Of a stretch of DNA of 64,000 nucleotides, positions 22,454-50,543 are shown in pieces. The notes beneath the pieces were generated by a model. The model had not been told where the DNA came from, searched no databases, and was given only the letters and a program-made list of their open reading frames with translations. The DNA is taken from the NCBI GenBank assembly GCA_964106645.2, contig OZ067043.1. One strand, written 5' to 3'. The first letter of the stretch is position 1. The number at the start of each line of letters is the position of its first letter. This stretch comes from Podarcis pityusensis. Lineage: Eukaryota. The position numbers and the translations under genes were made by a program.

Positions 22454-22869
22454 TTTCCTTTATGGCATTCTTCCTCATAGTTGTCAGATAGGAGCCCAAT
22501 GCATTTTGCTTTTTGTGGCAAAGTATTTGGATCCTGCCCCTTCCCACTCCTTGGCAGTGTGCACCACATCAGAACTTACTGGTGCATTGTGAGATGCATT
22601 AAATAAATAGCCTCACACATCCACTGGGGGCTCTGTTCTGTAGTAATGCTTGTAAACGTAGGATACAGCATTCTCTGACACGCAGTATTGCGTGGACAAG
22701 CTGTCATTACTGTTCAAAATATTTAATTTCTGTGATGCCACTTGCAAAGTAAAGATGTAAGGCCAACGATACTGCTTAGGTTCATTCTTATAATAAAAAA
22801 TCGACATGTTTGGGGCCATTCACTAACCTACTCCAAGAGTAATAAGCACGCTCTGTCTTCACTTGCCAG

Positions 22870-22985
22870 GTTACAGTGTGACTGTCAGCACAACACCTGT
22901 GGAGCATCATGTGATCGATGCTGCCCAGGCTTCAACCAGATGCCATGGAAACCAGCCACAACCGACAGCGCCAATGAATGTGAAT
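22870..22985 (+). CDS. LAMA5: LAMA5 exon ~7 (LE)
   Basis: cag|GTTACAG...GAAT|gtaagt; 116 nt; LQCDCQHNTCGASCDRCCPGFNQMPWKPATTDSANECE. Confidence 0.96.
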
Positions 22986-41470: not shown

Positions 41471-41627
41471 ACCAGCAATAGACCATTATATCCCTGACCT
41501 TCATCACCTGAAATACGAGCTGGAAGAGGGGACTACACTGGATGGACGGCCTGTTCGATTTGGCTACAACCCCTTGGAATTTGAGAATTTCAGCTGGAGA
41601 GGATATGCACAAATGTCTTCCATCCAG
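41471..41627 (+). CDS. LAMA5: LAMA5 exon ~22 (start of L4a/IVb domain)
   Basis: cag|ACCAGC...ATCCAG|gtaggc; 157 nt; [52 protein letters not shown]; ends in phase 0. Confidence 0.96.
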
Positions 41628-43481
41628 GTAGGCCTTAACTCCCCACCTCTTTCCTTGGGCAGATAGTAAAGGCAGCTTCAAATGTTATGGATTTCACAAG
41701 AGCAAAGCACTTCCACACAGAGAAAAGGATAAAAAATATATGCATGCTGAGAAGCTGCAGTCAGCTGCAGCTACTCATCATCTGTACTCCAAATGTTCCT
41801 GCAATGAAATAATGCATGATCCATGCATGAGTTTCAAGATTTTAATATGTGTAAGTGCTTGCACTATTGGAAATATGTGGTGTTTGAAGTGACTTTCAAG
41901 ACGAGAGATCTCCTATGCATTTTACCCAAAGGGACTCCTAAAAACAGACAGAGCCCAATGCAAGCAGTCGCTCCATATTTGTGTGCATATGCTTCTACAC
42001 TGAAAGCCTGTTCGTGCTAATGTGCTCTTTAGGCTTAGAAAGAGAACAGCGGGATGATAGGAGAGGTCCCAAGTCCTGGAACCGCTTCATTATGTCAGCC
42101 TTAGTTCATTTAGGGGGAGATGGCCAGGCAGGAACTATATAAGGGGACTGCCAGTTAGAAAGACAACACACAAACAGGTCTCCTAAAGGGCTATTCTCCC
42201 TCTTCCTGTTGCAACTCTGCATAACATCTCCCTGCTCCTCAAAGGAAAGGAAAACCCTCTTTGCTTTTTCCTGTGCTGCATGTGGCTTTAGTTGCTCTTT
42301 CATCTGTTGAAGAGGGTGGCTTGTTTATTTCAGGCTTTTGTATGCTTGAATGACAAGAGAATGAGACTGTAACATCTGCTGAGCTTGCTCCCACCTGAGA
42401 TGTTGTTACTCTCTGAAATCTGGAGACCTCACAGAGAGAAAGTGTTTATGTGTGGTCTGTGTGGTTCATTTGAAACTCTCTTATATGACTTTATTCTTTA
42501 GGAGAGGGTTCTTAGATTAAAGATTATTTTTGTTTTATTTCTGCCCCTTAGGAAAATGAGCTTAAGGACAGACTTTCCTTGTTCTCTTTAAATTTTTTTT
42601 TTATGGTGCCTGCTCTCTCATTCCTTGTGCCATTGTTACAGTCCCACTCTTAGCCTTTAATAGCCAGAGGCTCACAAAAGTGCTCATTCGACAATTTAGT
42701 TACTGTCTGAAAGGTGCAAATGAACCTTTGAAGGTAGTCTTTTGTCTTGCTATAGAAACCCCCAGCTTTCTTGGAGAGAGGTACATGCCTTGCTTAGCCT
42801 TCTCGGAAATGTCAGCTTGAACTGGAGCACCACAGCTAATCCGCATATTCTGTTTGCACGTGGTTAATCTGATTTGCATGGATTCTTGATGCCAGCCCAT
42901 TGGTGTGGACAACTCCCAGTCTTTCCACTTGCATTTTCCAATCAGTTAATGTCTCAAACATGGCAGTCTTTATAAATGCCAGGAGATACAAGAGCAAAAT
43001 TAATTTTAGGCTCATAATGCCCACACATTTTTTATGATGTAGTGATGATTTTGAGATTTTTGAAAGTTTGCATGCAGTCTTAATATCACAGAGAGTTGTG
43101 TGTATGTGCACATCTGCTTTCAAGAAAGATACATGCCGTGCTTCCCCCCCCCCCCCGCTAGAAAAATAGGTGCCAGAACTCACCATTAAGTTGTTACAGT
43201 AAGTGCCACACCTTTTAACCAAAAAAAGAGAGGTGCTGGTACTGCGTACTTTTGAGTACCCCCTGAATTAAAAAAACAACAACACTGGATATAGGTGTCC
43301 TTAACCACCCATTGGCATTCCTATCCACATCTTTCTCACAATCAGACTGATGTGTAAACTTTTCCCATGTTAGTGTTAGGAATTATTTGCAGGGCCACTT
43401 TTGTGATTTTTACTTGCAAAATAGGAAGCAGCCTTCCTAAGGACATCAGAGCCCTGTTGAATCAGACCCTGTGATTTTGCC

Positions 43482-43830
43482 TAAAGGTAAAGGGACCTCT
43501 GTCCATTAGGTCCAGTCGTGACTGACTCTGGGGTTGCGGCGCTCATCTCGCTTTATTGGCCGAGGGAGCCGGCGTACAGCTTCTGGGTCATGTGGCCAGC
43601 ATGACTAAGCCGCTTCTGGCGGACCAGAGCAGCGCACGGAAATGCCGTTTCCCTTCCCGCCAGAGCAATACCTATTTACTTGCACTTTGACGTGCTTTCG
43701 AACTGCTAGGTTGGCAGGAGCAAGGACTGACTGAGCAACGGGAGCTCATCCCGTTGCGGGGATTCGAACCGCCGACCTTCTGATCGGCAAGCCCTAGGCT
43801 CTGTGGTTTAACCCACAGCACCACCCGCAT
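43482..43830 (-). mobile_element. Sauria SINE
   Basis: taaaggtaaagggacc ... ttaacccacagcaccacccgc. Confidence 0.9.
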
Positions 43831-44222
43831 CTCCTCCCCCTTTAATGGCATCTAAGCGGCAGGCCATCACTGCACCTTGTGGCAATGGGTTATGAATTTT
43901 GTATGCACTCGGTGTGCTTCTCTTTAGAAGTCATCTTCTCTCGTCTCTCCCTTTTCTCCCTTCGGCTCTTGACTATGGAATGTCTGTTTCTGGCTGGATA
44001 GATAGCCTTAGTGGAATGTGCAGCGAGTGTTTCAGAGGCATCTTTCCAGGCCATCCCATTAAGAGCAGGATGGGGCTGGCTTGATTTCCTCACCTGCTTT
44101 GGCATGCTGCTTTTGGGAGCAGGAATACGGGAGTGCTGTGCTTGAGCTGGTGGCTGGTGGCAGGTGACGGTGGAGGTTTATTTAAGGTGTGCTCTGCTTC
44201 TCTCCCCTTTCTCTCCCACCAG

Positions 44223-44361
44223 CCCAAGGTAGTGGTGACCCTCAGTGTGACCTCCCCTGACCTGTTCCGCCTCGTCTTCCGCTACGTCAACCGGGGGCCT
44301 GCAAATGTGGAAGGGAGGGTCTCAGGCCTTGAGGAAGGAAAGTTTAATGTTTGTGGCAACT
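44223..44361 (+). CDS. LAMA5: LAMA5 exon ~23a (canonical, human-like)
   Basis: cag|CCCAAG...AACT|gtaagt; 139 nt, phase 0/1; [46 protein letters not shown]. Confidence 0.95.
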
Positions 44362-44662
44362 GTAAGTGCATTTTTCACTTCTAGACTAACCCCTTTCGAA
44401 AACCAGTTGATAAAGGAGCCGACCTTTGCTTTTTCTTGCAAAGCAGCGTTTTTCTTCTCCCTCCCCAAAAGCCACCACCACCACCACTCATTTCGTAGAT
44501 TTTGGATCTCCTCAAGCAGTTTGCTCTTAGGAACCACAAAGGGTGGGGAACCTAGCGAGGCAAAGAGAGAGACAGAGAGAGAGAGACAGGCAGGGCAGGT
44601 AACAGACTCGCTGTCTGCCCTGCAATGATAATGTGCCCGATGTGCTTTTTCACCTTTTGCAG

Positions 44663-44792
44663 AACAAAGTCAAAGTCACAGTGCGGGTCAGAGAAGCGGA
44701 GATCTATCTCTTCCATGTCATCTTGAGATATATTAACTCAGGAAGTGCCACTGTGTACGGCAAAATTACAGCTTATCAGCCACGAAGGAGAG
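44663..44792 (+). CDS. LAMA5: LAMA5 candidate mutually exclusive exon ~23b (tandem paralog of 23a)
   Basis: tgtgctttttcaccttttgcag|AACAAA...GGAGAG|gtaagg; 130 nt, phase 0/1, no stop; NKVKVTVRVREAEIYLFHVILRYINSGSATVYGKITAYQPRRR; shares the KVxVT...LF...RY.N.G.A.V.G pattern with 23a. Confidence 0.85.
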
Positions 44793-50400: not shown

Positions 50401-50543
50401 ATACAGAACAGACAAAGCAGATTGTATTTGTGCCCACAAAAGAGCCGGCTTTTGTCACTGTTCCTCAGAACAGCTTTGGGGAGCCGTTTGTGCTGAGTCC
50501 TAATGTGTGGTCTCTGGTCATTGAAGTCGAGGATGTACTACTG
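50401..50543 (+). CDS. LAMA5: LAMA5 exon ~24
   Basis: cag|ATACAG...CTACTG|gtaagg; 143 nt, starts in phase 1; TEQTKQIVFVPTKEPAFVTVPQNSFGEPFVLSPNVWSLVIEVEDVLL. Confidence 0.96.

What the first reader, a model, noticed from the sequence alone, without database searches (positions are those of the whole stretch)
44223..44792. Tandem duplicated, apparently mutually exclusive exon pair (23a/23b) in the LAMA5 L4a/IVb domain
Seen in sequence: two intact exons lie between exon 22 (ends phase 0) and exon 24 (starts phase 1). They are 139 nt and 130 nt long, 301 nt apart, both phase 0/1, each with a polypyrimidine-CAG acceptor and a GTAAG donor. They are homologous: about 14 of 40 residues are identical (KVxVT..V...LF....RY.N.G.A.V.G), while the DNA is strongly diverged. 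Joining 23a to 23b gives T|AA, an immediate stop. Skipping both shifts the frame to a TGA inside exon 24. Only either/or use gives full-length protein. Established knowledge: this is the classic architecture of NMD-policed mutually exclusive exons, and the human LAMA5 protein I remember has only the 23a-type segment. Inference: this animal makes two laminin alpha-5 chains with different short-arm globular domains. 23b is basic at its end (QPRRR) and lacks cysteine. I am not aware of this switch being described, but I cannot search the literature.
Basis: partly seen in the sequence, partly recalled or inferred. Interest (0 to 1): 0.93.

Follow-up and report, generated by a model that had tools for sequence, protein, structure and literature searches.

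The report
Ancient either/or exon in laminin alpha-5
Lizards, birds, fish and sharks can build the basement-membrane protein laminin alpha-5 with either of two old copies of one exon; this switch is older than the split of the alpha-3 and alpha-5 genes, and mammals appear to have kept one copy in each gene.

Summary
Confirmed. Two intact homologous exons (23a 44223-44361, 23b 44663-44792, both phase 0/1) lie in a lacertid LAMA5 gene; using both or neither gives a stop. RNA-derived contigs show 22>23b and 23a>23b joints; 22>23a was not seen. The pair is not lizard-specific. Database LAMA5 proteins carry either exon from chimaera to birds, and bird and chimaera DNA keep the same layout. LAMA3 has the same pair (coelacanth, paddlefish, turtle, snakes), and an exon tree groups a with a and b with b across both genes (100/99), so the switch predates the LAMA3/LAMA5 duplication. 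All mammalian LAMA5 proteins seen are a-type (squirrel DNA lacks b); all mammalian LAMA3 proteins seen are b-type (not tested on DNA). In this lizard 23b looks like the main exon, and the 23a form has lost its paired cysteine, so 23a may act partly as a poison exon. The exon swaps three strands of a CBM-like beta-sandwich. Known kind of event; isoforms sit in automatic annotations, but I found no paper. Another first-reader note on this same stretch guessed the LAMA3 link; no note on other DNA was found.

The parts
41471..41627 (+).
   Evidence: covered by RNA contigs
44096..44222 (+). Conserved intronic element upstream of 23a, TGG/GGTG-rich with one GCATG; likely splicing-regulatory
   Evidence: 86% to godwit over 298 columns including the exon; motif counts; partial conservation in chimaera
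44223..44361 (+). Exon 23a, 139 nt, phase 0/1, mammal-type segment ending in the first Cys of a CxxC
44362..44391 (+). Conserved start of the a-b intron, with a branch-point-like CTAAC at +28
44610..44662 (+). Conserved 3' end of the a-b intron (branch point region and pyrimidine tract of 23b)
   Evidence: (82% over 212 columns including the exon)
44663..44792 (+). Exon 23b, 130 nt, phase 0/1, basic, no Cys, no N-glycosylation sequon; orthologous to the usual LAMA3 exon
50401..50543 (+). Exon 24, constitutive; its first two bases complete a codon shared by both isoforms (Tyr after 23a, Asp after 23b; Cys and Gly in other vertebrates)

Best explanation
23a and 23b are tandem-duplicated, mutually exclusive exons. 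They arose before the duplication that made LAMA3 and LAMA5 and are chosen by regulated splicing, with nonsense-mediated decay removing transcripts that take both or neither. Each exon supplies three strands of the first of three CBM-like beta-sandwiches in the short-arm globular domain of laminin alpha-5 (old domain IVb). The a form typically adds N-glycan sites and a CxxC loop; the b form gives an unglycosylated, strongly basic surface, most plausibly changing binding to acidic partners such as heparan sulfate. Lineages then resolved the switch differently: mammals kept a in LAMA5 and b in LAMA3, most other jawed vertebrates kept both in LAMA5, and squamates appear to favour b in LAMA5. Shown: sequence, frames, RNA joints, distribution, exon tree, purifying selection. 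Inferred: NMD, tissue regulation, binding differences.
For: Frames and stops. RNA contig joining 41627>44663 with GT..AG, 1477 nt, depth 9.55. a/b isoform pairs in the same species for LAMA5: chimaera, three sharks, zebrafish, axolotl, alligator, two turtles; for LAMA3: coelacanth, paddlefish, softshell turtle, two snakes. Same order, lengths and phases, with TAA on co-inclusion, in godwit and chimaera DNA. Exon tree a|b split 100/99. Lizard-godwit pN 0.049 and 0.082 against pS 0.17 and 0.42; constitutive pS 0.69; Fisher p 2e-9 and 0.004 for synonymous constraint. 57/57 mammalian LAMA5 a-type with CxxC; squirrel intron 23a-24 is 186 nt with no b trace. Charge +5 to +9 and no sequon in LAMA5 b, against -3 to +5 and 1-2 sequons in a. 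Strand placement in both models; fold matches.
Against: No 22>23a or 23a>24 joint was seen in lizard RNA, and one run showed 23a>23b, so exclusion is leaky. Runs X1 and X5 were picked for holding 23b; raw reads gave only a handful of exon reads. The tree has 44 columns and no invertebrate root; the AU test against a LAMA5-only origin is marginal (p 0.0496). Loss of a from mammalian LAMA3 rests on proteins only, found with a b-type query. No binding or tissue data.
Confidence: 0.85

Rival explanations
1. In lacertid lizards specifically, 23a no longer makes much protein. It works as a poison exon: when included it is spliced on to 23b, creates TAA and sends the mRNA to decay, so the lizard makes essentially one (b-type) chain. 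This refines the best explanation for this lineage rather than replacing it.
For: The only RNA on 23a in four runs is a contig joining 23a>23b. Podarcis, Zootoca, Rhineura, Elgaria and Varanus RefSeq models listed are all b. The a|24 residue is Cys in 198 of 199 scorable a-type proteins and Tyr only in Podarcis. Residue 35 of 23a is Gly only in the two lacertid models among 223 proteins. 23a has the strongest synonymous constraint (pS 0.17), so DNA-level selection could hold it.
Against: The frame is open, the peptide differs from Varanus 23a at two residues, and pN is still below pS against godwit (p 0.03). The a>b contig starts 28 nt inside the upstream intron, so it may be a splicing intermediate. 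Tissues are unknown; an a-only form may be confined to unsampled tissue.
Confidence: 0.4
2. Exclusion is hard-wired by a distant branch point close to the 23a donor, as in OGDH 4a/4b or alpha-tropomyosin, so a and b cannot be spliced together.
For: Branch-point-like motifs at +28 of the a-b intron in lizard and godwit and at +22 to +38 in chimaera; the intron stays short (225-301 nt). OGDH uses branch points at +25 to +41 (PMC7969005).
Against: The intron holds 12-29 AGs and an AG-free zone of only 29-55 nt, not the long zone that OGDH shows. 23a>23b splicing was seen.
Confidence: 0.1
3. The LAMA3 and LAMA5 pairs arose by separate exon duplications, or one exon is a dead remnant.
For: Short alignment; marginal AU test.
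Against: a groups with a and b with b at 100/99; same order a-then-b in a sturgeon LAMA3 model; both exons are conserved from chimaera to birds.
Confidence: 0.05

Closest known systems
Tandem duplicated exon substitutions / mutually exclusive homologous exons (PMC9741552, PMC4494069)
   Same: Two homologous exons in tandem with the same phases, either/or use, ancient origin, swap of part of one folded domain.
   Different: Those catalogues start from human genes; neither main text mentions laminin, nor do the two supplements held for PMC9741552. Mammalian LAMA5 has only one exon, so a human-based list would miss it.
Splice isoform separation after gene duplication (CALU, U2AF1, MARVELD3 and others; PMC4494069)
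   Same: Each paralog keeps a different ancestral exon (mammalian LAMA5 a, LAMA3 b).
   Different: Both paralogs kept both exons long after the duplication (snakes, turtles and coelacanth still do in LAMA3); separation came late and by lineage. LAMA3 loss is not yet shown on DNA.
FGFR2 IIIb/IIIc switch (own knowledge)
   Same: Regulated pair of 3n+1 exons in an extracellular beta-sandwich, co-inclusion removed by NMD, UGG-rich intronic elements nearby.
   Different: No regulator, tissue or ligand difference was tested here.
Known laminin alpha-chain variants: alpha3A/alpha3B promoters and LaNt alpha31 (PMC9788559, PMC11260871)
   Same: Variation in the short arm of alpha3/alpha5-type chains.
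   Different: Those truncate the chain; this swaps about 45 residues inside a full-length globular domain. The passages I searched in both reviews do not mention it.
OGDH exons 4a/4b (PMC7969005)
   Same: Ancient pair with a short intervening intron and a branch-point-like motif near the upstream donor.
   Different: No long AG-exclusion zone here, and co-inclusion was observed.

Membership tests
Mutually exclusive homologous exons | Two adjacent exons homologous to each other | tested here: met
   Score 66, 0/10,000 shuffles; same three strands in both models
Mutually exclusive homologous exons | Same phases; both or neither breaks the frame | tested here: met
   (lizard; co-inclusion TAA also in godwit and chimaera)
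Mutually exclusive homologous exons | Each exon used alone in mature mRNA, across vertebrates | tested here: met
   Isoform pairs in annotations; full-length proteins from 11-13 kb Logan contigs with a (P0174-P0178) or b (P0027, P0076, P0082, P0096)
Mutually exclusive homologous exons | Each exon used alone in this lizard | tested here: inconclusive
   22>23b seen, 22>23a not seen, 23a>23b seen; low depth, biased run choice
Mutually exclusive homologous exons | Purifying selection on both exons | tested here: met
   pN below pS for both, lizard vs godwit; not resolved for the lacertid branch alone
NMD-policed exon pairs | Co-inclusion product rises when NMD is blocked | not testable with these tools
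   Stop far upstream of the last junction is shown; decay is inferred
Splice isoform separation after gene duplication | Exon pair older than the gene duplication | tested here: met
   Exon tree 100/99, AU p 0.0496, unrooted
Splice isoform separation after gene duplication | Paralog 1 lost one exon (mammalian LAMA5 lost b) | tested here: met
   Squirrel DNA; 57/57 proteins; monotreme and marsupial DNA not obtained
Splice isoform separation after gene duplication | Paralog 2 lost the other exon (mammalian LAMA3 lost a) | tested here: inconclusive
   All mammalian LAMA3 proteins seen are b; no DNA could be fetched
Distant-branch-point (steric) exon pairs | Long AG-exclusion zone from a branch point near the donor to the acceptor | tested here: not met
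   AG-free zone 29-55 nt, 12-29 AGs in the intron
RNA-structure (docking/selector) exon pairs | Conserved long-range pairing between flanking introns | tested here: not met
   No duplex beyond shuffles in three species; local folds z -1.1 and +0.3

The most novel reading that the evidence does not exclude
An undescribed splice switch in the laminin alpha-3/5 ancestor toggles a glycosylated, disulfide-looped surface against a basic heparan-sulfate-binding surface. It was resolved several times long after the gene duplication: reciprocally in mammals and, in parallel, in frogs (LAMA5 a, LAMA3 b), and the opposite way in lacertids, where 23a is turning from a coding exon into a poison exon. Part of the functional difference between mammalian alpha-5 and alpha-3B would then be a frozen splice choice.
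Probability: 0.3. Interest if true: 0.78.

Novelty: new member of a known kind. Interest (0 to 1): 0.6.

Why it matters
The short-arm domain that this exon builds has no solved structure among the hits and no function that I could find in the reviews searched. A natural swap kept from chimaera to birds marks one of its surfaces as important and gives two forms to compare. Zebrafish has both lama5 isoforms, so the switch can be tested directly. It also offers a case of late, lineage-by-lineage partition of splice forms between whole-genome-duplication paralogs, which human-centred catalogues cannot see.

Tried and rejected
Pfam and PDB sequence searches with single exons: nothing. A third copy of the exon between exons 22 and 24: the splice-site scan found no further candidate resembling 23a or 23b. 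A tblastn extension at 22739-22870 suggesting another duplicate exon: spurious. RNA-structure control: not supported. Distant branch point: not supported. ESM Atlas: laminin clusters under 0.9, lead only. Nine paper searches (less the general ones) and passage checks found no description; subscription papers are not covered. I did not send any joined model of the window's exons to a search or fold tool: window exons were searched one by one by reference, frames were checked locally, and structure jobs used stored database proteins (alligator isoforms X1 and X3). No human contig was fetched. The human-labelled protein P0409 and the unlabelled P0378 were left out of all comparisons; the unlabelled primate-like P0321 was scored once and then dropped.

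Full report
Observation. The window holds part of LAMA5 from a lacertid lizard; the Podarcis raffonei protein matches its exons closely and the 23b segment exactly. Either exon alone keeps the frame from exon 22 to 25. Both together give TAA at the junction, and neither gives TGA at 50494. The peptides share 14 of 38 aligned residues, far above shuffles.

RNA in lizards. Fourteen contig runs guessed to be RNA, from four studies, hold 0.7-0.9 of the 23b words. In run X5 a 1477-nt contig joins exon 22 directly to 23b with GT..AG ends and has no 23a. In run X1 a 659-nt contig joins 23a to 23b and starts 28 nt inside the upstream intron. No 22>23a joint was seen. Two raw-read runs not chosen for 23b had a few reads on 23b and none on 23a. 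Exon 24 lay outside the stretch laid, so joints into it were not seen directly. The depth is low and cannot give ratios. So 23b is spliced, exclusion is leaky, and use of 23a alone is unproven in this animal.

Distribution in LAMA5. Database proteins fall into a-type and b-type at this position. Both types occur as isoforms of one species in chimaera, three sharks, zebrafish, axolotl, alligator and two turtles. Godwit DNA has a (139 nt), a 260-nt intron and b (130 nt); chimaera has 136, 225 and 130 nt. Co-inclusion gives TAA in both. Proteins called on 11-13 kb Logan contigs, the size of the mRNA, carry a in zebrafish-like runs and b in a squamate and three fishes. All 57 mammalian proteins checked, monotremes included, are a-type, as are 15 marsupial cluster members and 15 Xenopus proteins. 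In squirrel DNA the intron after 23a is 186 nt with no trace of b. Most squamate RefSeq models are b-type; a appears in UniRef models for Varanus and Podarcis, in a gecko, and in a Lacerta model with an odd junction.

LAMA3 has the same pair. Of 112 segments from the LAMA3 search (six of them LAMA5 proteins that came up with it), 110 scored as b; the query was b-type, so this count is biased. The two exceptions were a corn snake protein with an a-type segment and a sturgeon model with a then b. Cluster members then showed a/b isoform pairs in coelacanth, paddlefish, softshell turtle, vine snake and rattlesnake LAMA3. In a tree of 51 exon peptides all a exons of both genes stand against all b exons at 100/99; holding LAMA5 a and b together is rejected only marginally (p 0.0496), the alignment is short and there is no outgroup. 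The simplest reading is one exon duplication before the LAMA3/LAMA5 gene duplication. Mammalian, bird and amphibian LAMA3 proteins seen are all b, but I could not fetch their DNA, so loss of a there is not shown.

Selection and regulation. Between lizard and godwit, both exons have pN below pS, and both have strongly reduced synonymous change (0.17 and 0.42 against 0.69 in ten constitutive exons). About 130 nt upstream of 23a, 30 nt after it and 50 nt before 23b are conserved, while the rest of the introns between exons 22 and 24 is not. This is the usual signature of regulated exons (own knowledge). The element upstream of 23a has more TGG and GGTG than 17 other acceptors in the window, and one GCATG; these resemble ESRP and RBFOX sites, which is a lead only. 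A steric branch-point lock and RNA pairing were tested and not supported. Regulated choice with NMD clean-up is the best fit; NMD itself is inferred.

Protein effect. AlphaFold2 models of the alligator a and b isoforms (mean pLDDT 73.5 and 71.9, low pTM) show three beta-sandwich modules. The exon gives three strands of the first module in both forms; in a it ends in a low-confidence loop holding the CxxC. The modules match CBM35/CBM6-like folds and the laminin beta2 LF domain (Z 12.3); most matches cover the second module, one covers the first (Z 9.8). Across species LAMA5 b has net charge +5 to +9 and no sequon, while a has -3 to +5 and one or two sequons. A change in binding to acidic glycans is my inference; nothing was measured.

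The lacertid twist. Exon 24 starts with AT here and with GT or GC in godwit, squirrel and chimaera. That one base turns the shared codon into Tyr after 23a and Asp after 23b. Cys is kept in 198 of 199 scorable a-type proteins; Asp occurs only in lacertid and amphisbaenian b-type proteins. 23a also has Gly at a position that is hydrophobic in nearly all other species. With the RNA result, this suggests that the a isoform is decaying as protein in lacertids and that 23a may serve as a poison exon. I give this about 40%.

Known or new. The kind of event is well known (PMC9741552), as is partition of such exons between paralogs (PMC4494069). Neither paper mentions laminins in the text held, and no search found a description. 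Both isoforms are already in automatic annotations, so the sequences are not new; their recognition as one ancient switch shared by LAMA3 and LAMA5 appears to be.

Limits and handling. No human contig was fetched, and human-labelled proteins were left out of comparisons. Verdict: real, ancient, a new member of a known kind, interest 0.6.

Noticed in passing
window 43482-43828: A high-copy repeat (probably a Sauria-type SINE, from memory) in intron 22, covered by thousands of RNA reads from other loci; a second, smaller repeat near 43167-43267.
   Followed up: no
window 44772: C>T in 3 of 3 reads of run X23 changes Ala to Val in 23b; RefSeq Podarcis muralis has Val there, while a contig from the same organism code has C. 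Probably a polymorphism.
   Followed up: partly
window 44588-44622 (a-b intron): A local hairpin around a CAGGT donor-like motif about 65 nt before 23b; CAGGT motifs also occur in the godwit and chimaera introns. Folding is no better than shuffles.
   Followed up: partly
proteins P0380, P0493-P0506 and other frog entries: All frog LAMA5 proteins seen are a-type and all frog LAMA3 proteins seen are b-type, whereas axolotl LAMA5 has both: possibly a parallel loss to that of mammals. No DNA checked.
   Followed up: partly
proteins P0457, P0466, P0471 (LAMA3 a-type): Turtle and snake LAMA3 a exons have no cysteine at the end, while coelacanth and paddlefish ones keep two; the CxxC is specific to LAMA5 a in its usual form.
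   Followed up: no
proteins P0012, P0032-P0034, P0036, P0051, P0054-P0057, P0180, P0211, P0275: Several gene predictions stitch a and b together through invented splice sites or intron read-through; these are annotation errors caused by the hidden pair.
   Followed up: no
L001 and L002, 3' ends: ADRM1 lies tail-to-tail with LAMA5 in godwit and squirrel, confirming orthology of the loci used.
   Followed up: yes
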